Positions 17,224 to 63,747 of a DNA stretch of 64,000 nucleotides are shown one piece after another. The translations under genes were made by a program, and so were the position numbers. Position 1 is the stretch's first letter; each line of letters begins with the position of its first letter. The stretch is from Botryllus schlosseri. Taxonomy: Eukaryota. Location: positions 8,122,001 to 8,186,000 of the forward strand of contig CM119383.1 of assembly GCA_051294905.1 (NCBI GenBank). Direction: 5' to 3'. The notes under the pieces were generated by a model. It was not told the origin of the DNA. It made no database searches and worked only from the letters and a program-made list of their open reading frames with translations.

Positions 17224-18115
17224 CAGACTTGGACAACTAGAAAATCTTCAGCTTTTCTGAACTAGATTAGAATTTGAATTAAAGCTCCCCAGTTTTTTTC
17301 AAACTAGATTAGAATTAGAGCTACAAAGTTTTTTCCAAATTAGACTAGAATTAGAATTAGAGCTACACAGCTTTTTTCAAATTAGATTAGAATTAGAATT
17401 AGAGCCACTAAGCTTTTTCCAGATTAGATTAGAATTAGAATTAGAGCTACTTAGTTCGCAAAAACTTGGAAATTCAATGAAACTGTATATGGGAAATGAA
17501 TACAGCAAAATGCAGTTCACAACAAATCACAGTGCGTGGTGCAAAAGGCGATAAGCGCCACATATTTTTGTTTAATAAACAAAAACAACAGTGCAGTCCC
17601 ATAACCATGAGAATGGTTACCTTCTGTACACCAAGCTTAGCTCGATTTTTACTATACTTTAATAAAATATTACTTCTTTTATGGTAACCGTGGGCATCGC
17701 CCATGTTAGTCAGAATGGCGATGTACTGACGTAAATTACCTTTAGAAACTAGAATGTTGTTCGCAGACTACAAGCTGCTCTAGCAGGCTATTATTCGTCA
17801 TGACTCATAATATCTACTATGACTGCACGGTGTAAGTAAGGCGCTGGCGGCTTGGCACTGGATTTCCCTGCGCAAGAGGGATATTCTTTTTAACTCACTG
17901 CAATAGTGCAATATGCCTCGGACAAAGAGCCATTTTCAGGAAAACAATAATTAGATTAGAACTAGAATTAGAGAATACGGACATTTCACAAATTAGATTA
18001 GAATTAGAATTAGAGCATGGAAGCATTTCACAAATTAGATTAGAATTAGATAACTGGCATTTCGCTCTAATTTAGTGAAATTAGACAACTAGAATTATCT
18101 AGTTGTCCAAGTCTG
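17224..18115. mobile_element. hAT-like MITE, CAGACTTGG family, 892 bp
   Basis: TIR CAGACTTGGACAACTAGA at both ends; perfect 8-bp TSD TCAACAAC (17216-17223, 18116-18123); subterminal (AATTAG)n arrays. Confidence 0.88.
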
Positions 18116-18242
18116 TCAACAACAAACGCTATCTCACGTGGTGAAACTATAGGACACTATGGTGAAACTATTTTGCTGTTACGCCACTATTTCGTCACAA
18201 TTGTTTATTATCGGGAATAATTCTTTATTTCTAATCCCGTAA

Positions 18243-18360
18243 ATGTCAAAACTCACTGCGGTGATAGCTGTAGCATCAGGTAGCTGCGATGTTGACGTTA
18301 TTGTTACTGCGTCGCATTTACGTCAATTGGGAATTGAGGTTCTTATTGCTTCTGTTGAAG
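18243..18360 (+). CDS. DJ-1-like gene exon 1
   Basis: MSKLTAVIAVASGSCDVDVIVTASHLRQLGIEVLIASVE|gtatgt. Confidence 0.8.
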
Positions 18361-21300
18361 GTATGTTATTAATACGTAATACTCAAAATAGGACCTGCAT
18401 TCGATCGAACTGATAAACAACTCGCTTTTTTTACACAGGATGGTCTCCGGTGACCCTGCGCAATGGCCTTGTAGTCAAACCACATTGCAGCGTTGACCGA
18501 CTGTTTTACTCTCGAGGCTCCAGGTGAAATTTCTTTGCTTGCGACCCAGGCAAATCACGAGTAAATACTCCTGCTGAGCTGAGACCCATCAGAATATCGC
18601 CGTGCCGTTTAATCTTGTTTGGGAACACAACTCCCTGGGTTTGCTTCAATGGCTTTGTCATATTTCATGTAGAGTAACGAAGTAGTCTACTTCTACTTTG
18701 TAGAGGTAGGCTACTCGAGTAGTTTCCTCTACTTGTAGAACTTACTCAAGTAAAAGTTATTTTCCGCTACTTCTACTTCGTAATATTTGGTTATTCGATG
18801 TTTGCTGTTCGTCAAGTAAAAGTATTATGCTTTTCAATGAGGGAGGGAGAGAGAGATGAAGAATGATAAATTTAGAGCTGTTTACTCGGAAAATCATCAA
18901 AAATTTAATTTTCACAAAAATGAAGTCCAGGATTTTTGTCGTGCTTTCGCGAAATAGATATCGAGTGACAAATCTGTTTTCACGGAAGTATCAATCAATA
19001 TATTTATGACGGGTAGTGTGTTTCATTTATAACCGCATTATTGCCACTCATATGACAGTTTCATCACAGTGAATAGGTAGCCTACCGTAATCTAGCAACG
19101 TATGGCGTGTGCCAAACTGAAAAAGTGGTCCTTGAATTTTGAGCGTTAGACTTTGTTTTGGCAGACCACCGTTGAAGCTTTCGGGACAAAATACCTTAAA
19201 TATATTTGTAATTAATATATACGTGGAATTGTTATGCTGTGGAAAATTCATACATCCTTGGATGTAGCAACACGAACGCAGCAGCTCACTTACAAGCTTT
19301 AGTCCATTAGAGTGCATTTATGAATACTTTTCGCAACTATTTGACTTACTTGAGCAGATTCAACGCCAGTCAATTCTACTTATACTTGACGTAGTTATCG
19401 GTTGCTTTTAAAAGCGCTATACTTCTACTCGTATTCGAGTAGATATTTGCGTCGATACTTCTACTTCTACGTGAGTAGCTTTATTGAATACTTTGACCGC
19501 GTTTGATTATATGTATAAAATACACAGATATAGAGCTGACTCTTCAGGGGATTTCGGTGCAAAGTTAGCATATATGCAGATTTTATTCCCATATTCTCTT
19601 AGCCCACTAAAGCCGATTCCGACCTGAGCTAAATTATAATCCCATTACGCTGGACGTCAACTCAAATCTTTTCATCTCTAGCTTACAGTCTACACAGTGC
19701 ACAGCCGCACACCCTTTGTATATGTCATATGGTGTCACTAAACATTTACGATAGTAACAGTATTATTGAGATATATTGTAGCATGATGTCATTACTTCAG
19801 CAGTATTGTAAAAGCAGCGACCAAATTATCAAGTTAGCAACGACGACCTTCAACATGCCCTACATATTTACAGAATATTGACTATACAATATGCGCGTCA
19901 TTTGCGATGCCCACACTGTAAAGAAATTCGCATTGGACTCAGTTCACATCTTATTAAGCTTGACCGTGGCCATGGCAAAACAGATCCATGAGACAGTTCA
20001 TTAACCCTGACAATTTTGTACTTGCAGGCCGTTTGATTTCCTGTTACTTCCAGACGGAGATGACATCAGCTACGGGCGGCTCCAAAGTCACCCGCAGTTG
20101 GCAGTTGCAGTCAGAAATCTCCTCGGCACGGAATCAACATCGAAGTCCGTAGAGCTCCATTCTAACGACATAACCCCCTGTATCGTTTTCGCCGGAATCA
20201 GCATCAAGCTACACCGTTACTGGTTACCGCACAATAAAAATTCGCGCATTCGCTCAATCAAAAACTGGTTCATATCGAAGGCAAGTGGGTCTCAGATAAT
20301 ATTGCAGGAACACGGCCAATCTGCCAATGCGGTTCTGTGTTGCGGCGCTTCGTCGGAAAATCCAGTTGAGACAGCTGATACATGCGCTAGCATTGCTCAC
20401 AAACTTATACAAAGCAAGGCGCGAAACGATATGAAAGCTAAGATGGGAAATTTGAAATCTTCCGCTATCCAGACCCGGATAAACCGTAACCGGCCAAAAC
20501 CGGTTGCGAGTCAACTGCGCTTGCTGACATACCTCCGAGACTGCGCCTGGATTCCGAGCGGTTTGCGGGCTTTTGTGCTTTCACCTGTATACTCGTTGTT
20601 TGCCGAAGAGAACAAACCCTCCACGTACTATCCCAGTGGTTTGTATCCCGGATTGTCGCTGGACGAAGGAGATCAGCTGAAGAAGGTTCACTTTGATCGA
20701 ACTAGTCTTGGAATCGGATCAAAATCCGCTGCTTGCGTTATCGAAAAGATCAAGCGTTTCATCGGCAAGTCGCTGGATCTTGATAGAAGGTGAGCTAGCT
20801 TTTTGCCTTTACCTTGCAGGGATAAAGTTCGATTATCATTCACAACCTGCAGCTCAGCTGCACGCCTGGTGGCTATCCAACGTCCATATAGCCCTTTCGC
20901 ACCAGATCCATCCAATTCAATTCTGTTAATTAAATTCTTTAAAATGTAAAAATTAGGTGATCCACGGACTTTGTGACGACACATTACCAGAGATTCTTGT
21001 CTGTTGTAATCAAGTGCTGATCATCAAAAATGGTTACTGCGGTTATTACCGACAATAGAATAATAATTTCATTTGTTGAGATTTTAATCGCAAAATTATA
21101 TATTACAATCAAGGGAAACGGAACACACCTTATAAATATAGCCAGAGTAGCCGAGCTCAATAGATTTACAATCGATTCTGAACGAAATTTCAGACCACTG
21201 CCAATGTGCAGTGCGGCAATACTAGTGTGCAACAGAGTCGACGAACAATTACTAGCAGTCCTCGTCCACTCTCTGAGCGCCAAGTTCAAACTGATGACCC

Positions 21301-23230
21301 ACGTGATCGCCTGCGACCGCGCTTTACTTCAAACGAGAGATCCTTTCGTAATTACTCGCGGAATGCTGCAGATAAGAGCCGACAACAATATTGAAACGTC
21401 AGTAAACATTGCTGTTTAATGCTGTACTGCAAGCGTATAAGTTTTAGGCGACCTTTTATCGATGTCATATGTTCGTCACAGAGCAAAACCGTGCTACGAC
21501 GTGGTTATAGCGATTGACAGTGAAGTGGTGGGAGGCGGTCCTGGCATTTGGTATAGAAAGAGCACGTTTGATTATGGAGATTTTGAGATCATACGGAAAG
21601 GCAAACTGCCCCCGCACGTCTCGTGTGTAGCCGCCAAATTCGATGCAGGGGATAAATGCGCTGGGATCATGCAATCTGTCACTGACAAAAGACTCAATCC
21701 TCTGACCAACGAGTGGATTAGGCTGGAGACTAGTTCAGGTCAGTAATATGACCGAGTAGTATTTCATCGCCGCAGCCGCACTCGATGCGTCACAGTATTT
21801 ATCAGGGGCGGGCAGACCTGCTTCATGCGCAAACCGCATATGAAAAATCTTAGTCTCAAAAGAACCATAACACAAAAATTCAAACGTACGAATTTTTTCC
21901 GTCGCAATGAAATTTAGGCTATCGAATTCAGTTTATTATTGTGTGGTGATACGGCTACAAAGTGTTTGAAATCAGGCGGATATGACATCAAAGCAGTGCG
22001 GAGCAGTTCCTTCAAATTCCACTGAGCATTCAAGGTAGATTTCAGCTCGGTAGTCTTACTAACTCCTTAAATCTGTCTTCGTTGGGTAACTAGTGGAAAA
22101 TTTTTGGTGTTTGGTTCAAGCATTAAAGCAATAGCCCACTTTCATTCTAGGCTTTTATAAAACATCACTCATGCGGATCGGATAACAACGAGAAGTCTAT
22201 TGATAATTCTCCAATACCTAGGTTTCGGGATTCTGGAGTAGACCACGACCGAGCTTAAAACTGGCGGGCGATTGATGTTGCAGCAACGTTGCCTGCCACT
22301 ACGCTATACTCGCCACAATCGGCCGCTTTATTTTATTCTGTAGCGACATCGCGTTTTCATTGATGTTCCAGGACATTTACGGTGATACCCCTCTTAAAAT
22401 CCAGTAGCTTTCAAACAAACCAAACTTGTCTATTCAGGTGTGCTATCTAATAGCCCTAAGATTATTATTCCGCAGCAATGTGCCTTTATCTTTATAGTTC
22501 ATATAAAATTACCTTCTGTCGATATGCAATATATATACCAGCCGTCTTCCATAAAAAAGACGAAACGGGAAGCATTTGGACTTTGGATACACTTTGCATT
22601 AATATTAAACAATCGACTACGGCTGTGTGTCGCTACGAAATGAATCGATGGGCTTTTCTTATTTCGCTACAACTTTTCATCATTGTTATTCCTGTTTCCT
22701 ACTTGGCAATTTCTCACATAGTTCGTCTTTGCTAGTATCAACAAATGTAAGCGTATGATTCTGCAAAATTGTGGTCATTGTGCCATTCAAAAGTTTAGGG
22801 TCCAAAATCTTGATCGGATTATTTTAAAGAGGTCTGAAAAAACCGCTGTCTTCATACATTCGTCTGGCACTATTTCGGCACGAATGCATAGCGCTTGGTA
22901 CACTTGACCCTCGTTTCAACTTCTCTACCCCTTTCAGATACTGGCATTGAAAAGAAGACCCCAGACACCACATTTTTCGATGTTTGTCACGACATTGGGC
23001 GATCAAAGACCGGATTGTGGAAAGCAGACAACAGTCACAGTCTGCTATTCCAAACGTTTCGCTCGTTTCACTCAGGATCCGCTTTGCATACCTCTGTTTC
23101 GAGCAGATCGAGTGCTCACGACGCCATGGACTTCTCGCGAGCAGTAACCGACTGTCTGCGCAAACTAATGATGAAAAATGGCCAGCAGTTGGAATCTGTG
23201 CCGCAGTATTCCAGATGCGTAGTTATGTAG
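18243..23230 (+). CDS. Divergent tandem two-domain DJ-1/PfpI-superfamily (PARK7-like) protein, 6 exons, 572 aa
   Basis: Exons 18243-18360, 18439-18523, 20028-20789, 21194-21397, 21482-21738, 22938-23230; all GT-AG, phases 1,2,2,2,1, 1719 nt open. Domain 1: KLTAVIAVASGSCDVDVIV..GIEVLIASVEGWSPVTLRNGLVVKPHCSV..PFDFLLLPDG. Domain 2: AAILVCNRVDEQLL..DPFVITRGMLQIRADNNIE..PCYDVVIAI..TSVSSRSSAHDAMDFSRAVTDCL. Both parallel DJ-1 (KRALVILAKGAEEME..DPVQCSRDVVICPDASL..PYDVVVLPGG..TSRGPGTSFEFALAIVEAL). The family call is by eye. Confidence 0.75.
18439..18523 (+). CDS. DJ-1-like gene exon 2
   Basis: ttacacag|GWSPVTLRNGLVVKPHCSVDRLFYSRGS|gtgaaa. Confidence 0.78.
20028..20789 (+). CDS. DJ-1-like gene exon 3 (rest of domain 1 plus linker)
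   Basis: cttgcag|RPFDFLLLPDGDDISYGRL.. continues through the supplied ORF 20098-20793 to DLDR ag|gtgagc. Confidence 0.8.
21194..21397 (+). CDS. DJ-1-like gene exon 4 (start of domain 2)
   Basis: tttcag|RPLPMCSAAILVCNRVDEQLLAVLVHSL..RADNNIE|gtcagt. Confidence 0.78.
21482..21738 (+). CDS. DJ-1-like gene exon 5
   Basis: cacag|TAKPCYDVVIAIDSEVVGGG..WIRLETSS|gtcagt. Confidence 0.78.
22938..23230 (+). CDS. DJ-1-like gene terminal exon
   Basis: ctttcag|DTGIEKKTPD..LHTSVSSRSSAHDAMDFSRAVTDCLRK..CVVM*. Confidence 0.75.
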
Positions 23231-26061
23231 CAGCTTTAGGAGAAATAAAATCTGATCCGTCTGATAGCAATATTTTGTAGAAACTTATGCTCGGACTGTG
23301 TGTCGCCTTGCTTGTCCATTCCAATAAGTGCTTTCCAGTATGTAACCGTGTAAAAAAAGAAAGCATGTGAATATCCGTGGGTCACATTATTACACGAGTG
23401 GAAATAAAAGTTTCACCGCAAATGTCTACTCGATTGCAAATAGCAGTGGCGATTTCCAAGACATGTCAAAGTTACTACAAATGGAAGTAAAATACGAAGA
23501 ATTGAGAAGTACTCAAGTAAGTAATTTCAAAAAGTAGATTTGGTTGAGATATCGCATAACTTATAAAGCCAATCGAATAACGGTAACTCCGCAATTGAAG
23601 GGTGCATCTTCACGATTAACGCAAGGTGACAAATACGTAGAGCGATTTTTTGACTTATTAAAAAAGGACAAAAGCTGTCAAAATTGAGATTTTACCCACT
23701 GCATTTCATTGGTTTTGTAAAGGTTGCAGTTATCATTTGACATTTTACGCCTTGTAGAATACTTACTCTTGGTCGCCCATTGTCTACTCACTGTGAATTA
23801 TATCACAGCCCATCGAATGAATCAAAAAAATTGGCATGGCGTGATGATCAACGCACGTAAAACAGGTGAAATTTTTATTAAGTCCGAAGTTTTTACAAGC
23901 TCACCTCGATATCTCAAATCTAGATCTGAAACTTGACTACGTGGTGGACATATGCTCCTGTAGTACGGTGGTTCTCAACGTATGGGTGATACGCGAGATG
24001 TTAACAAAACTCAGATTTGGGTTGAGCATGGCCATTGGCCAGTGACCATGGGTTGAGGTCTGAAAAGGGCAACGTTGGCATTCTTGGCAACATTGTCGGT
24101 ATGAAGCAACAAGTATGTTACTACCACTTCAGCAGCATACACTGAACTTTAAGGCTGCAAGCAAACAACTGCTGCTATTGAACATTTTTCTCTATTCTTG
24201 CCAAGCTACTTCGTAAAGACAGACAGTTCCAACCAGAGATGTAGAAAACAACTACAATTCTAACTTTATATCCGACGATGCTAATTTAAATACTTTAGGG
24301 CAAAATTTTGTCAAAATTAATTTTTTTAATATCAAAATTTTCACTTTTTAGAGCAAAATCTTCTGTGTTTTTTGGTTAAAAACCAATCGTCCTACTAATA
24401 TGCAATCGAATATGCGCAATTTTCGAAAATTAAACAGGTCCTGCAATTCGGGACTTATTTCACGCAGTCGCTGTCACAATTTCACTCATAAACGTGATGA
24501 AAACTTATCCCCAAACCAACCATATTCTACTTTACCGCATCTACGTATGTGATACACTGATACATCTTACAGTTTGAAAATCGGGATATTGTTTTGCAAG
24601 CCCTTTCACAATAATTTCCCATCCCCAATATGTTGACGCGCTCGGTGGCGCTATGGAGCACGTCGCATTCCGTTCGTCTCGAACTGGTCTCGTCATGTCA
24701 TCAAAGCTTGTATTTGAAACGCATAAGTAAAATGACAGTGTGTGTACTGTTTTCAATTGCATGTGCAATGTGCATACTGCGCGGTAAATTTGTCGAAGAT
24801 TCCAGAAAAAAAATGAAGTAGCCTACTCTAGCAGTCGAAATGTTATTTATTCCTCATGAGATATTACCACTATTCCGATCGCGTTACGTTCTCGGAGGTG
24901 GGAATATTACCAGATTTGTGAATACTCCTACGTAGGTTGGAGCAGCATTCACAGCTTGTATATTTTAGAACAGCGCAAAATTTACACAATTAGGGCAAAA
25001 TCGGTGCTCATCTGTAGCCGATACTAACCATATCAAAACAGCTATCTATGTCGTCGAGGAAGACGGTCACACAATATCTTAAAGTATTTGGATAAGTAAA
25101 AGAACACCTAAATATACATGTAAGTTGTGTCCCAGTCACTCGCTGAACGGCGCCAGCCGAGCGAAATACGATACCCAGAAAACTCTATCGCCGAGAGATA
25201 TCCTGCGAGAGTACCGTTCCAGTTTAGTCAGACTACGGGAGGCGTTTATGCCGCATCGCGATACCTTCGACCGTTGATCAGGTGGCTACAAGTACACTCA
25301 GGTATTCATCATTCAGGGTATTAAGCAAAACCTTGCATAGGAATATTTTGGACTGAGGTATGTCAGATATTTGCTGAGAATGTACCGAGTATACCGTCTG
25401 ACAAAAACGCTGCTGCTTTAAAACGCACCCTGTTATTACGTGTTTCGTCGTTGCACCTCTGTAATTACTACTACTCAAAATCAAGAATATGATTCTACAG
25501 TTCATTTTATTGTGTCGGGTTTGATATATGAGGATCAGAGTTGAGACGAGGTGCTTTATTTGTCGTTCTGCAACTTGAGAAAGCTGGTAAAATCAACTTC
25601 ACACATGTATCGCAGAGAGATTGAATTTTGTATAGCATTTAAATTATTTTCAAGCACCGAGGCGCTTAAACTTACAAATGTGGTGTGTGAGTTGAACCTG
25701 GATGTCTATTGGCGCGACCATAATGGATTTTAGCATTGGCCGACACTCCGTACTGTTGAAATCTTGTGGAGATACAATATGGACCCTCACTTACGAAAAT
25801 CGCAGAAGAAGCCGGCGTAAACTTCCTCGTGATAGTCGTAAATCGACAACGAGTGATGATGAACGTGATATTTCGGAACAAAAAGCCTATTGTCGGAATT
25901 GTGACGCTTGTAAAGACGGTGATATCCTTGTTGATAATAAGGCCAGATCCAACTTTGCGGTTTTACCAAGAAAATACAGGTAACTCAGGTTTACGTAACG
26001 CAGCGCCGCTAATGTTTACCACGGCTGTGTTGAAATGTTCAGGCGACGGAAAATAGATCGA

Positions 26062-61056: not shown

Positions 61057-61095
61057 ATGCTACGAAGTGCACTTCACCGATGCTTACTCGTGGAG
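61057..61095 (+). CDS. AhpD-like gene putative exon 1 (leader)
   Basis: MLRSALHRCLLVE|gttagt; phase 0 fits the next exon. Confidence 0.6.
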
Positions 61096-63747
61096 GTTAG
61101 TCAAGTTCACTTCCTCCATCAAATCAATAACATGATCAATTCATTTACGACATACCGGTATGATTTCGCGGTTTGCTCTGTTTCCGGCGATCTATTTTTT
61201 ATAATTCACTAAAAGTGAAGTGATGCTGTTCATTTTTTATGTATGCATATGTTTTGATTTTTATTTTTACAGCGATGCACAACAAGACTACCTGGGTTAT
61301 CAACACGCAGGCAACAGTCTGATGCAAGCTCGTTGTATGAGACACCAAATGTAAGCATATGCTTTGCAGACCCGTTGCTATTGGGTTTGAAAATTACCAG
61401 GCAGTAAAGCCTGATATCTCACTCGTTATCTCTAGTTTTATATCATGTTATGTTACTGTCATGAGTACATGATTATATTGATTTGTAGTGAGTTGAGAAA
61501 TTGTTTTTTTCCGGATACCAAAGAGATTTATAATTATATCAATTGACCTCTGTTCCATTTTAAAGGTGAAACAGCTACCAGTTCAGGTACAAAAAAGACT
61601 TCACAAAGCCGAGGACGTTCATGGATTTATACCAAATTTTCTACATATGTACAGCAGAAGACCAAAGGAATTTTCTGCATTTTTTGAGTATCACGACACT
61701 GTAATGTCAGAAGGTAAGGCTGTGTGTTAATGACTTTAATGACGAGGATCAGAAGTCCTAAAACCATGTGTACTTGAGATCACAAAAATCAAACTGTGCG
61801 GTTTATGACTTTTCCAATTATTTTCAAAGTAGATAAAAGACCAATTAGTGTCCCGGAGTGTGGATGCTTCAAAGCTGAATTTACATATAACTCATGACCG
61901 GCAATGTTAGGTTGTTAGGTAACTCATAGTGGAGGGGAGGACTTTGATGTGGGCAGTGTTAGAACTTTTATATTAGTTTTGGTAAATGGTTGGTGATTAG
62001 GGCTGGGCAAATTCGAGTACCTGAGTGATTCGATTCTGAATCACGTAATATGCTTCGAGTCGAGTCGAGTATTAGAGTATCACTCATTATGACGTCATAA
62101 CAGAATGTAATATGTCAAAGTTCAAATAAGTACCTCTTATGCCAACACAAAGAACACGATGCCCGTTAGCCATCACATTAACGATACTTAGTATTTTTCG
62201 ACCATGCCGATTTCATTGAACTTTGTGACAATGTTGTGGGATAATCATGCCTTCGCAAATGTGATATTTCTAGTAACGTTCGTGGCGTTGTACAAGTACT
62301 TTATACCCTGCTTTGTATGCTGCGGTACGGCCAATCAAGGTTTCATGTCTGCCAAAGTGAAAAATAGTATTGAAGCTATAATTTTTGTTGATGAATTAAC
62401 TTTCAGTGGCGAAGAGCGTATAATTTCAGTACTCGAAAAATTCGTCTTTTACTACTCGACTCGAATCATGAAAATAAATACTCGATTCAGATTCGAGTAC
62501 TCGAATCATTGTGCCCAGCCCTATTGGTGATTGAATGGTGTTTTTGCATAGTAGAATTATAATGTAGCTCAAAGCAGCTCTCTGAAGAGAACCAATGTTA
62601 CACCTTGTGGATGCACGTAATCATCCATATTCCCTCTCCAATGCCTTCACTCTGTCAACCTGGCAAAATGTATCATATAACGTTAACTTTCAAAATATAA
62701 TATTATACACTAATGAATTGGTTTGCAATAGTCTTGTTAAGCAACCGAGTGTGTCAATTTCAGTTATGTTCAACTTCAACGTTGCAAAATTCATGAAAGG
62801 GCTTATGGCAAGCTATGAATGTGGTGTTCAATATGTACCATGTCACTTTCACCACTCTCACCTGCTTCGGTCAAATATGTCATTGCCCTGCACCTGCAGT
62901 CTATCAAATTAATCTATGTCCTGAATGCTGGGGTCATTCACTGAACTCTTGCCAGATCACACATACAATTATTTATTTCGTCAACATATTGCAGAACGGG
63001 GAAATTTAACTAGAACGGAAAAGGAGATGATAGCCTTGGTCACGAGTGCGAAACAAGGCTGTGTTTACTGCGCTGTAGCGCACAGCGGATTGTTAAAGAA
63101 GTATTCTGATGACGCTGTCCACCCTGAAGAGGTAACACAGTCATATTTCACAGTTTGCAGTAATATTCTGAAACAACCCTTTAAAAACACTAGCCACAAT
63201 TTGTCTTAACACTTCATTGTGATTGATTTAGCCCTTTTCACTGTGATTGCTGATACCGCAAGTCGTGAAGTGTTGAAAACATGATCAGAACATACAATAA
63301 ATAGCTTTTCAGTTTTCACTGTTCATAGAAAACACATCAAACAATGGAATCTCTGCAAACAACACAAATTTGTACTACCACACTAAATATATACACATTG
63401 GCATGATAAGTTCAATGAAACCAGACACTGGACAATGTACAATACTAGACTGCATAAAATGATTCAGGTTTTAAAATCACCTATTGCCATTTCAGCTGGT
63501 CATCAACTGGCAACAGGCTGACATCACGGATCGCCAAAAGGCAATTCTATCGTTCGCAACAGGCATAACCCACGGAAAGCGTGCCTCTAAAGATGATTTT
63601 GAAAAACTCGCGGCACATGGATTAGATTCAGAGGACGCGTGGGATATCATAGCTGTTATGGGGTTGACCACCATGACGGGTTACATGGCTATCTTGACGG
63701 ATGTACAGCCCAACGAGCAGTTTCATAAAATGGCTAGACGTAAATAG
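61057..63747 (+). CDS. AhpD/carboxymuconolactone-decarboxylase-family peroxidase-related protein with putative mitochondrial leader, 5 exons, 217 aa
   Basis: Exons 61057-61095, 61273-61350, 61566-61713, 62995-63131, 63496-63747 (654 nt, phases 0,0,1,0). GFIPNF..RRPKEFSAFFEYHD..M, LTRTEKEMIALVTS..GCVYCAVAH and INWQQADITDRQKAILSFA..EDAWDI..VQPNEQF match the bacterial uncharacterised peroxidase-related AhpD family. The first two exons are less certain. Confidence 0.87.
61273..61350 (+). CDS. AhpD-like gene exon 2
   Basis: tttttacag|RCTTRLPGLSTRRQQSDASSLYETPN|gtaagc. Confidence 0.72.
61566..61713 (+). CDS. AhpD-like gene exon 3
   Basis: VKQLPVQVQKRLHKAEDVHGFIPNFLHMYSRRPKEFSAFFEYHDTVMSE|gtaagg. 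Confidence 0.88.
61998..62523. mobile_element. hAT-like MITE in AhpD-like gene intron
   Basis: TIR TAGGGCTGGGCA..TGCCCAGCCCTA; perfect 8-bp TSD TTGGTGAT (61990-61997, 62524-62531); a related left end occurs at about 9226. Confidence 0.88.
62995..63131 (+). CDS. AhpD-like gene exon 4 (CxxCxxxH site)
   Basis: ERGNLTRTEKEMIALVTSAKQGCVYCAVAHSGLLKKYSDDAVHPEE|gtaaca. Confidence 0.9.
63496..63747 (+). CDS. AhpD-like gene terminal exon
   Basis: tttcag|LVINWQQADITDRQKAILSFA..DVQPNEQFHKMARRK*. Confidence 0.9.
   Translation: MVINWQQADITDRQKAILSFATGITHGKRASKDDFEKLAAHGLDSEDAWDIIAVMGLTTMTGYMAILTDVQPNEQFHKMARRK

What the first reader, a model, noticed from the sequence alone, without database searches (positions are those of the whole stretch)
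18243..23230. Hidden six-exon gene encoding a tandem double DJ-1/PfpI-fold protein with eroded catalytic sites
Seen: six exons splice into one 572-aa open frame that the ORF track shows only as four unrelated fragments. It carries two DJ-1-like units, each with the N-terminal strand plus acidic helix, the P(Y/F)DxxxxP/I strand and the C-terminal helix, separated by an unexplained ~110-aa linker (SSAIQTRINRNRP..KSLDLDRR). Known: metazoan DJ-1/PARK7 is a ~190-aa single-domain homodimer that needs Glu18 and Cys106; tandem DJ-1 fusions are typical of plants. Seen: unit 1 has GSCDVD where DJ-1 has GAEEME, and no AAICAG elbow (PCIVFAG instead); unit 2 has NRVDEQ and HVSCVAA, whose Cys may or may not be in register. 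Inference: a lineage-specific intramolecular pseudo-dimer, probably a pseudoenzyme or neofunctionalised DJ-1 paralogue that automated annotation would likely leave uncharacterised.
Basis: partly seen in the sequence, partly recalled or inferred. Interest (0 to 1): 0.72.

Follow-up and report, generated by a model that had tools for sequence, protein, structure and literature searches.

The report
Spliced two-domain DJ-1-like gene, lipid-anchor tail
The six predicted exons are one expressed gene for a 572-residue protein: its front part is a DJ-1 (Parkinson-protein) fold without the catalytic cysteine, its back part is probably a second, very diverged DJ-1-like domain, it ends in a lipid-anchor (CaaX) signal, and its only named relative is an uncharacterised sea-squirt protein.

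Summary
Observation confirmed. Six GT..AG exons (18243-23230, + strand) join into a 572-aa frame. Spliced RNA contigs from two studies cover all five junctions, including exon 3 to exon 4, so this is one transcript and not two genes.

The protein aligns end to end (43% identity) with Styela clava 'uncharacterized protein LOC120339501'. All other relatives are a few anonymous contigs. In one of them both halves lie in a single uninterrupted ORF.

The gene is single-copy in its genome. Variants seen in the RNA contigs give pN/pS 0.21. An intact canonical PARK7 lies on another contig.

- **Unit 1 (residues 1-205)** is a DJ-1 fold: hhalign probability 97-98%; the orthologue passes the Pfam cut-off; its model fits human DJ-1 at Z 16.5. 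It has Asp at the Glu18 position and no Cys106.
- **Unit 2 (323-572)** is only probably DJ-1-like: in-register hhalign P 0.002, nothing against three control folds, but both structure predictions failed. It keeps a cysteine (C438) in 5 of 6 sequences.
all four known C-termini end in a CaaX box (CVVM, CCIL, CNIQ, CLVQ). This predicts prenylation and membrane anchoring.

Verdict: a new variant of a known kind, an animal tandem DJ-1-like architecture with a 117-aa linker and a lipid anchor. Its biochemical function is untested.

The parts
18243..18360 (+). Exon 1 (ATG; residues 1-39). First strand and helix of DJ-1-like unit 1, including invariant Asp18 (codon 18294-18296).
   Evidence: model; X1 contig joins 18360 to 18439; DJ-1_PfpI E 0.016, profile 3-36; Asp18 invariant in 5 sequences.
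18439..18523 (+). Exon 2 (residues 40-67).
   Evidence: The intron sits at the same place in the relative's contig L007.
20028..20789 (+). Exon 3 (residues 68-322). Rest of unit 1 (to about 20439, residue 205, with the Cys-less 'IVFAG' elbow), then the 117-residue predicted-helical linker (20440-20789).
   Evidence: 4 homologue clusters; unit 1 against a DJ-1 profile; linker 30% identical to Styela; long helices predicted in the orthologue.
21194..21397 (+). Exon 4 (residues 323-390). Start of unit 2, with the conserved NRV[DN]EQ and ACDR motifs.
   Evidence: junctions 20789/21194 and 21397/21482 in RNA contigs; in-register hhalign match to the DJ-1 N-terminus, P 0.002.
21482..21738 (+). Exon 5 (residues 391-475). 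Unit 2 core: YDVVIAIDSE strand, GPGIWYRKSTF, conserved Cys438 (codon 21624-21626), LNPLTN.
   Evidence: Cys present in 5 of 6 sequences; 5 synonymous against 1 non-synonymous variant in residues 323-475.
22938..23230 (+). Exon 6 (residues 476-572 plus TAG). C-terminal strand and helix of unit 2, and the CaaX box CVVM (23216-23227).
   Evidence: junction 21738/22938; Cys at -4 in all four known C-termini: CVVM, CCIL, CNIQ, CLVQ; weak co-linear match to the last DJ-1 helix.
23231..23379 (+). 3' untranslated region (at least), with an AATAAA about 15 nt after the stop.
   Evidence: X1 contig 4 runs to 23379; sequence.

Best explanation
This is a real, expressed, single-copy, six-exon gene under purifying selection. 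It encodes a 572-residue cytosolic protein of the DJ-1/PfpI superfamily with an architecture not described in animals.

Shown:
- The N-terminal domain (residues 1-205) has the DJ-1 fold. It has lost the nucleophile cysteine and carries Asp where DJ-1 has Glu18, so it cannot work as a canonical Cys106 enzyme.

Inferred:
- A 117-residue, mostly helical linker leads to a second, better-conserved alpha/beta domain (323-572) that is most likely a strongly diverged second DJ-1-like unit.
- The two units probably pack against each other as an intramolecular counterpart of the DJ-1 homodimer.
- The conserved C-terminal CaaX box is farnesylated or geranylgeranylated and ties the protein to the cytosolic face of membranes.
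- The mostly conserved Cys438 of unit 2 is the best candidate for a reactive (redox-sensing or catalytic) thiol. I therefore expect a membrane-tethered sensor or scaffold, or a non-canonical thiol enzyme, rather than a glyoxalase of the PARK7 type.
For: Gene and transcript:
- Exon model and frame.
- All five junctions in spliced RNA contigs of two studies.
- Variants in those contigs are 16 synonymous and 11 non-synonymous: pN/pS 0.21, binomial p 7e-5.
- One locus only in the genome.

Family:
- End-to-end 43% identity to Styela clava XP_039263574.
- P0003 carries both halves in one uninterrupted ORF, and contig L007 shares the intron positions.

Unit 1:
- The orthologue scores 39.3 bits (32.6 for its N-terminus alone) on Pfam DJ-1_PfpI, above the 26.6 cut-off.
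- The window protein, residues 5-99, scores 20.4 bits (E 1e-7) against my DJ-1 HMM built from 30 bacterial sequences.
- hhalign gives probability 97% (E 1e-10) locally and 97.9% over the whole domain.
- Residues 1-211 of the orthologue's model fit human DJ-1 residues 2-180 at Z 16.5, rmsd 3.8 A, 165 residues. The top Foldseek hits are nearly all DJ-1/PfpI-superfamily entries.

Unit 2:
- hhalign against DJ-1 scores 27.4, P 0.002, aligning 4-78 to 5-72 in register. Two hundred column shuffles gave mean 13.4 and maximum 21.2. GATase, flavodoxin and CheY control profiles scored 11-12.5.
- Pfam DJ-1_PfpI hits unit 2 of P0003 at E 0.0024, profile 2-66.
- There are weak co-linear HMM matches at both ends of the domain.
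- Its language-model neighbours include named DJ-1/PfpI clusters (score 0.85), and no named cluster is left once that family is excluded.

CaaX: cysteine at -4 in 4 of 4 C-termini, with an aliphatic residue at position a2.

Packing: complex prediction for unit 1 plus unit 2 scored 0.50 against a best control of 0.00, rated 'weak support'.
Against: - Unit 2 could not be folded. AF2 gave mean pLDDT 41 twice and ESMFold2 gave pLDDT 32-39. Its model matched nothing specific.
- Profile searches of both units against PDB sequences found no DJ-1, and Pfam gave nothing for four of five unit-2 sequences.
- The hhalign probability for unit 2 is only 13%, and the region around Cys438 is not aligned reliably.
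- One paralogue (P0003) has Arg in place of Cys438.
- The two units show no detectable similarity to each other.
- Structural evidence for unit 1 comes from the Styela orthologue's low-confidence model (pLDDT 50-60), not from the window's own protein.
- Prenylation, localisation and any activity are untested. Only four C-termini are known.
- The complex score is in the band where passes are 'more often wrong than right'. The runs shared no contacts and the partner's pLDDT was at least 32.
Confidence: 0.6

Rival explanations
1. The C-terminal half is not a DJ-1 relative. The protein would then be one degenerate DJ-1 domain fused through a helical linker to an unrelated or new alpha/beta domain that carries the CaaX tail.
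For: There is no confident fold and no specific structural match for unit 2. No Pfam hit was found for most unit-2 sequences. hhalign probability is only 13% and covers 75 residues. The two units show no similarity to each other.
Against: The only family that gives any signal is DJ-1. The match is in register from the first strand, with a second co-linear match at the last helix. Three other alpha/beta control families and shuffled or reversed controls give nothing. The language-model neighbours include named DJ-1/PfpI clusters, and nothing remains once that family is excluded.
Confidence: 0.25
2. The protein is an active thiol enzyme of the glyoxalase III, deglycase or esterase type. Cys438 of unit 2 would sit on the nucleophile elbow, and the dead unit 1 would only supply the dimer partner.
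For: Cys438 is kept in 5 of 6 sequences. By my reading it lies about 35 residues after the 'IDSE' strand, close to the ~31-residue spacing in DJ-1, and 'LNPL' follows where DJ-1 has 'THPL'. Unit 2's core is the best-conserved part (59% identity to Styela) and carries almost only synonymous variants.
Against: The global profile alignment does not put Cys438 on the DJ-1 cysteine column. The residues around it (S-C-V-A/T) lack the small residue usual two places after the nucleophile. His126 would be Asn. The Glu18 equivalent is uncertain (Leu or Gln, depending on register). The paralogue P0003 has Arg at this place.
Confidence: 0.25
3. Exons 1-3 and exons 4-6 are two neighbouring genes. Exon 3 runs into TGA right at its donor site, and exon 4 has an in-frame ATG.
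For: Reading through the exon 3 donor gives an immediate stop, and 'MCSAAIL' could start a protein.
Against: One 1580-nt RNA contig has 675 nt of exon 3 joined to exons 4, 5 and 6, and a second study shows the same join. P0003 has both halves in one ORF without an intron. The Styela mRNA model is full length.
Confidence: 0.02
4. The locus is a decaying, transcribed pseudogene of a duplicated DJ-1.
For: Catalytic residues are lost in unit 1. Expression is low in the two bulk RNA runs sampled (0-2 reads per bin).
Against: The 572-codon frame is open across six exons. pN/pS is 0.21. Orthologues are 43-77% identical in several organisms and keep the full length.
Confidence: 0.02

Closest known systems
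Animal DJ-1 / PARK7 (Pfam PF01965, DJ-1_PfpI), e.g. human DJ-1; E. coli YajL
   Same: Unit 1 has the same fold over the whole domain: Z 16.5 to human DJ-1 for the orthologue's model and hhalign probability 97-98%. An acidic residue sits at the Glu18 place. The 'P-[FY]-D-x-hydrophobic' strand and the C-terminal helix are recognisable in both units.
   Different: The protein is 572 residues in two units, not ~190 in one. Unit 1 has no Cys106 (Phe/Thr/Ala there) and Asp instead of Glu18. Unit 2 is diverged beyond Pfam's reach. There is a 117-residue linker and a CaaX tail. The genome has its own intact PARK7 on contig C9, with the motifs that hold Glu18, Cys106 and His126 in human DJ-1 intact, so this gene is not its replacement.
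Plant tandem DJ-1 proteins (Arabidopsis AtDJ1A-C; AtDJ1C lacks the cysteine in both domains), PMC3160306
   Same: Two DJ-1-like domains lie in one chain and are expected to form a pseudo-dimer. At least one domain has lost the hallmark cysteine but is still maintained by selection.
   Different: That paper calls the tandem architecture apparently unique to plants. Here the host is an animal. The two units are not recognisably similar to each other, they are separated by a long helical linker, there is no organelle-targeting leader, and there is a C-terminal CaaX box. Nothing suggests common descent with the plant fusions, though I did not test that.
Styela clava 'uncharacterized protein LOC120339501' (XP_039263574, 584 aa)
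   Same: It is the orthologue: 43% identity end to end, with the same two units, linker and CaaX (CCIL).
   Different: It is an automatic gene model without name, function or publication. A search for the locus name and the three run accessions found no paper.
CaaX-prenylated proteins (Ras/Ral-type tails; established knowledge of farnesyl- and geranylgeranyltransferase rules)
   Same: Cys lies four residues from the end, followed by mostly aliphatic residues. X = M or Q predicts farnesyl; X = L predicts geranylgeranyl.
   Different: The prenylated body would be a DJ-1-superfamily protein, which I have not seen described. That rests on my own knowledge, not on an exhaustive search.

Membership tests
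DJ-1/PfpI superfamily (PF01965), unit 1, residues 1-205 | Significant match to the family profile | tested here: met
   The orthologue P0002 scores 39.3 bits against a cut-off of 26.6. The window's spliced protein scores 20.4 bits (E 1e-7) against a local DJ-1 HMM. hhalign gives 97-98% probability, E 1e-10 to 3e-12. The window's whole protein could not be given to Pfam itself; exon 1 alone scored 15.5 bits.
DJ-1/PfpI superfamily (PF01965), unit 1, residues 1-205 | Flavodoxin-like alpha/beta fold that superposes on DJ-1 | tested here: met
   The model of the Styela orthologue, residues 1-211, fits human DJ-1 at Z 16.5, rmsd 3.8 A over 165 residues. Foldseek E is 1e-7. Caveats: pLDDT is only 50-60, and the protein is a proxy, not the window's own.
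DJ-1/PfpI superfamily (PF01965), unit 1, residues 1-205 | Nucleophile-elbow cysteine (Cys106 of human DJ-1) | tested here: not met
   The aligned segment reads IVFAG, IITAG, VIAIG or IVAAG in the five sequences. No cysteine is conserved there.
DJ-1/PfpI superfamily (PF01965), unit 1, residues 1-205 | Glutamate at the Glu18 position | tested here: not met
   Asp18 is invariant in 5 sequences, an acidic but shorter side chain.
DJ-1/PfpI superfamily (PF01965), unit 2, residues 323-572 | Significant match to the family profile | tested here: inconclusive
   hhalign P 0.002 (probability 13%), in register over 67 columns. This is above all 200 column shuffles and above three control families. Pfam gives E 0.0024 in P0003 only and nothing in four other unit-2 sequences. 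There is no PDB sequence hit.
DJ-1/PfpI superfamily (PF01965), unit 2, residues 323-572 | DJ-1 fold | tested here: inconclusive
   The AF2 domain model has pLDDT 41. Foldseek gives no match below E 0.16, and the wide VIA-align search gives best Z 4.5, generic alpha/beta hits on residues 1-90 only. The order of predicted strands and helices is compatible with DJ-1.
DJ-1/PfpI superfamily (PF01965), unit 2, residues 323-572 | Nucleophile-elbow cysteine | tested here: inconclusive
   Cys438 is conserved in 5 of 6 sequences at a plausible spacing, but the profile alignment does not place it on the DJ-1 Cys column.
DJ-1-type dimer (here intramolecular) | The two units contact each other | tested here: inconclusive
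   Complex prediction scored 0.50 against a best control of 0.00, rated 'weak support'. The mark was reached by 51 of 78 solved complexes and 2 of 108 mismatched pairs, but scores of 0.60 or under are more often wrong than right. The runs share 0% of contacts and the partner's pLDDT is at least 32.
CaaX-prenylated proteins | Cys at -4 followed by two mostly aliphatic residues and a transferase-compatible last residue | tested here: met
   CVVM (window), CCIL (Styela), CNIQ and CLVQ (two copies on L006).
CaaX-prenylated proteins | The lipid is actually attached, and the protein sits on a membrane | not testable with these tools
   This needs labelling or localisation experiments.
Plant-type tandem DJ-1 fusions | Two mutually similar DJ-1 domains directly in tandem | tested here: not met
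   The units show no detectable similarity to each other and are 117 residues apart.

The most novel reading that the evidence does not exclude
Sea squirts (and perhaps only they) carry a prenylated, membrane-anchored intramolecular DJ-1 pseudo-dimer. This would be the first tandem DJ-1 architecture in animals, arisen independently of the plant fusions. A dead N-terminal unit would serve as built-in partner for a C-terminal unit whose conserved Cys438 acts as a membrane-proximal redox or electrophile sensor.
Probability: 0.3. Interest if true: 0.55.

Novelty: new variant of a known kind. Interest (0 to 1): 0.45.

Why it matters
DJ-1 is heavily studied because of Parkinson's disease, yet its biochemical role is still disputed. 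Natural variants that keep the fold under selection while losing or moving the reactive cysteine show what the fold can do without canonical chemistry; plant AtDJ1C is one such case.

Tandem DJ-1 proteins have been described as apparently unique to plants (PMC3160306). An animal case with a lipid anchor would widen the known range of the superfamily. It would also give a tractable test of whether DJ-1-type dimers can work as membrane-tethered sensors.

On the practical side, this is a gene that ORF-based views split into unrelated fragments. No protein for it turned up in the large collections searched. The interest is limited by the narrow, apparently tunicate-restricted distribution and by the lack of any functional data.

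Tried and rejected
- **First exon model.** My first model (exon 4 ending at 21400/21401, exon 5 starting at 21448) broke the frame. The donor at 21397 and acceptor at 21482 restore it and are the sites used in the RNA.
- **Pfam on single exons.** This gave only a faint DJ-1 hit for exon 1. The window's own protein was analysed only in local scripts.
- **PDB sequence searches.** Profile searches of both units against PDB sequences found nothing. Those alignments were weakened by exon fragments used as rows, as was the first hhalign of the two units.
- **Structure prediction.** AF2 of the full orthologue and of unit 2 alone both gave pLDDT 41. The unit 2 model matched nothing useful.
- **Complex prediction.** Complex prediction gave only 'weak support'.
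- **Attempts at a diverse DJ-1 profile.** A protein search seeded with E. coli YajL and a scan of genome contigs returned only near-identical enterobacterial YajL. The profile finally came from 30 proteobacterial loci.
- **More family members.** Searches with the full orthologue and with a unit 2 profile added only P0003 and a 107-aa fragment.
- **Linker.** It has no Pfam or language-model neighbour and no membrane-spanning stretch.
- **Literature.** Nothing was found for the Styela locus or the run accessions of the anonymous contigs, so their organisms stay unknown.
- **Rejected readings.** Two separate genes, and a pseudogene (see rival explanations).
- **Not attempted.** dN/dS between species, because the sequences are too diverged (41-85% protein identity even to the nearest contig). 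Variants within the RNA contigs were used instead.

Full report
**1. The observation**

Between 18243 and 23230 on the + strand six segments with GT..AG borders can be joined: 18243-18360, 18439-18523, 20028-20789, 21194-21397, 21482-21738 and 22938-23230. An in-frame TAA lies directly before the ATG. My first choice of the exon 4/5 borders broke the frame. The correct pair (donor after 21397, acceptor before 21482) is the one seen in RNA.

**2. Is it one transcript?**

Exon 3 runs into TGA immediately after its donor, and exon 4 holds an in-frame ATG. Two three-exon genes were therefore a serious rival.

I laid contigs and reads of four public runs on 17900-23600.
- In run X1 a 1580-nt contig carries 675 nt of exon 3 joined to exons 4, 5 and 6 and then 150 nt past the stop. 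It skips exactly 20789/21194, 21397/21482 and 21738/22938 (GT..AG).
- A second X1 contig joins exon 1 to exon 2 (18360/18439), and exon 2 to exon 3 with three extra letters that keep the frame (one more Arg).
- X2, from another study, repeats the 4/5 junction and shows the 3/4 join with mismatched letters at the junction. A further X2 contig is compatible with the plain 2/3 junction.
- These runs are only guessed to be RNA, but intron-less contigs with canonical borders can hardly be anything else.
- The two bulk RNA runs read as raw reads gave almost no reads on the exons, so expression there is low.

Independent support comes from relatives. In one anonymous contig (L006) both halves lie in a single uninterrupted ORF (P0003, 511 aa as called). 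In another (L007) the introns sit at the same places as in the window. The two-gene rival is rejected.

**3. Is it functional?**

The RNA contigs differ from the window at 27 coding positions, 16 synonymous and 11 not. That gives pN/pS 0.21, p = 7e-5 against neutrality. In the core of the second half there are 5 synonymous changes against 1.

The genome holds only this one locus. The gene is not a pseudogene.

**4. Relatives**

An exhaustive HMMER search of 1.84 billion representative proteins with exon 3 found four clusters only.
- The one with a name is Styela clava 'uncharacterized protein LOC120339501' (584 aa). It aligns with the window's protein from the first to the last residue at 43% identity.
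- The others are anonymous assemblies of sequencing runs. L006 carries two tandem copies; L007 is the closest (74-77% identity in the conserved parts); L008 is the third contig. A 107-aa fragment was also found.
- Further searches with the whole orthologue and with a profile of the second half added nothing else.
- The window's own protein is not in these collections.
- Notes by other agents of this scan call this genome a sea squirt. I did not verify that. It fits with Styela being the only named relative.

Conservation between the window and Styela is uneven:

| Region | Identity to Styela |
|---|---|
| Residues 1-100 | 60% |
| Residues 323-475 | 59% |
| Residues 101-205 | 25% |
| Linker, 206-322 | 30% |

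**5. Unit 1 (residues 1-205) is a DJ-1 fold**

- The Styela protein passes Pfam's DJ-1_PfpI cut-off: 39.3 bits overall, 32.6 for residues 4-100 alone, cut-off 26.6.
- For the window's own spliced protein I built a DJ-1 profile from 30 proteobacterial family members. Residues 5-99 score 20.4 bits, E 1e-7.
- Profile against profile, hhalign gives 97% probability (E 1e-10) locally and 97.9% over the whole domain. Reversed controls give nothing.
- The AlphaFold2 model of the orthologue is of low confidence (mean pLDDT 41; 50-60 in this domain). Even so, its residues 1-211 superpose on human DJ-1 residues 2-180 with Z 16.5, rmsd 3.8 A over 165 residues. The top Foldseek hits are nearly all DJ-1/PfpI-superfamily entries. 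ESMFold2 folded this unit at pLDDT 63-72.

On the catalytic places:
- The residue aligned with Glu18 is Asp18, invariant in five sequences.
- The elbow that should hold Cys106 reads IVFAG, IITAG, VIAIG or IVAAG, without a conserved cysteine.

The acidic residue, however, is kept in shortened form.

**6. Unit 2 (323-572) is probably, not certainly, DJ-1-like**

For:
- hhalign aligns its first 75 residues with positions 5-72 of the DJ-1 profile, in register from the first strand. The score is 27.4, P 0.002, but the probability is only 13%.
- Two hundred column shuffles of the unit 2 alignment gave mean 13.4 and maximum 21.2.
- Control profiles of three other alpha/beta families that I built in the same way scored 11-12.5: class-I GATase, flavodoxin and CheY.
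- Pfam's DJ-1 model hits this unit in P0003 at E 0.0024, profile 2-66.
- My HMM gives weak but co-linear matches both at the N-terminus and at the last helix ('...dAvdFa..V.D.L' against the DJ-1 'GPGTa.dFal.li..L'). The global profile alignment keeps both.
- Language-model neighbours of this half include named DJ-1/PfpI clusters (score 0.85, a lead only). With that family excluded no named cluster is left.

Against:
- Both AF2 runs failed here (pLDDT 20-45; mean 41), and ESMFold2 gave pLDDT 32-39.
- The domain model matched nothing specific.
- PDB sequence searches and most Pfam scans were blank.
- The two units are not detectably similar to each other.

The middle of the domain is not aligned reliably. 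Whether Cys438 (HVSCVAA) sits on the nucleophile elbow therefore stays open.
- It is conserved in 5 of 6 sequences; P0003 has Arg.
- By my reading its spacing from the 'IDSE' strand fits.
- 'LNPL' follows where DJ-1 has 'THPL'.

I put the odds that unit 2 has the DJ-1/class-I-amidotransferase-like fold at about 70%.

**7.

All four sequences with a known C-terminus end in a CaaX box: CVVM in the window (23216-23227), CCIL in Styela, and CNIQ and CLVQ in the two L006 copies. By the established rules for protein prenyltransferases these predict farnesylation (X = M or Q) or geranylgeranylation (X = L).

There is no signal peptide and no membrane-spanning stretch. The protein is therefore expected on the cytosolic face of membranes. 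This is an inference from four sequences.

**8. Linker and pseudo-dimer**

Residues 206-322 are predicted as long helices in the orthologue. They have no family or language-model neighbour.

A complex prediction of unit 1 with unit 2 scored 0.50 against 0.00 for the best control. The tool rates this as weak support. The mark was reached by 51 of 78 solved complexes and 2 of 108 mismatches, but passes at 0.60 or under are more often wrong than right. The runs shared no contacts, and the partner's pLDDT was at least 32. It does not settle the pseudo-dimer idea.

**9. Context**

The genome has an intact four-exon PARK7 on contig C9 (17013390-17015115, minus strand). It keeps the motifs that hold Glu18, Cys106 and His126 in human DJ-1: GSEEIE, AICAAP and TSHP. 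A further cysteine-less DJ-1-like gene lies on C2. The window's gene is thus an additional, specialised member and not the organism's DJ-1.

**10. Comparison and verdict**

The nearest described analogues are the plant tandem DJ-1 proteins. They are thought to be pseudo-dimers, and one of them, AtDJ1C, lacks the cysteine in both domains and is still essential. The same paper calls the tandem architecture apparently unique to plants (PMC3160306).

The present protein differs in four ways: the host is an animal, the units are mutually unrecognisable, a long linker separates them, and the protein ends in a CaaX tail.

I file it as a new variant of a known kind.
- Established: the gene, its splicing, its conservation and the DJ-1 fold of unit 1.
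- Probable: the DJ-1 nature of unit 2 and the prenylation.
- Open: whether it acts as a sensor, a scaffold or an enzyme.

Noticed in passing
window 17308-17475 and 17942-18050; high depth 17900-18120: A 42-nt minisatellite (ATTAGAATTAGAG... units) occurs in two blocks just upstream of the gene. The stretch 17900-18120 is covered at very high depth in RNA contigs (about 1700) and by reads that fit only partly and run on into many different sequences. It is evidently a high-copy repeat carried in many transcripts.
   Followed up: partly
window 18523/20028 junction (run X1): One X1 contig has three extra letters at the exon 2/3 junction, in frame (one more Arg). This may be an allele, a shifted splice site in that strain or an assembly slip. 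An X2 contig fits the plain junction.
   Followed up: partly
own genome, contig C9:17013390-17015115 (-), loci L001/L005: Canonical four-exon PARK7/DJ-1 gene with the motifs that hold Glu18, Cys106 and His126 in human DJ-1 intact (GSEEIE, AICAAP, TSHP).
   Followed up: partly
own genome, contig C2:36368862-36369020 (-), locus L004: Another weak DJ-1-like gene whose elbow reads AIGYG (no cysteine). It may be a relative of the GATD1/PDDC1 type.
   Followed up: no
locus L006:3-848 and 1247-2984: In an unnamed organism with a compact genome the family is tandemly duplicated, with about 400 nt between copies and only one tiny intron. One copy (P0003) has Arg where the others have Cys438.
   Followed up: partly
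window 20591 (codon 256): A Tyr/Cys variant in the linker. The Cys allele matches the residue found in all four aligned relatives (Styela, L006b, L007, L008).
   Followed up: no
window 61057-63747: Another first-stage note on this window reports a bacterial-type AhpD-like gene with introns. I did not examine it.
   Followed up: no
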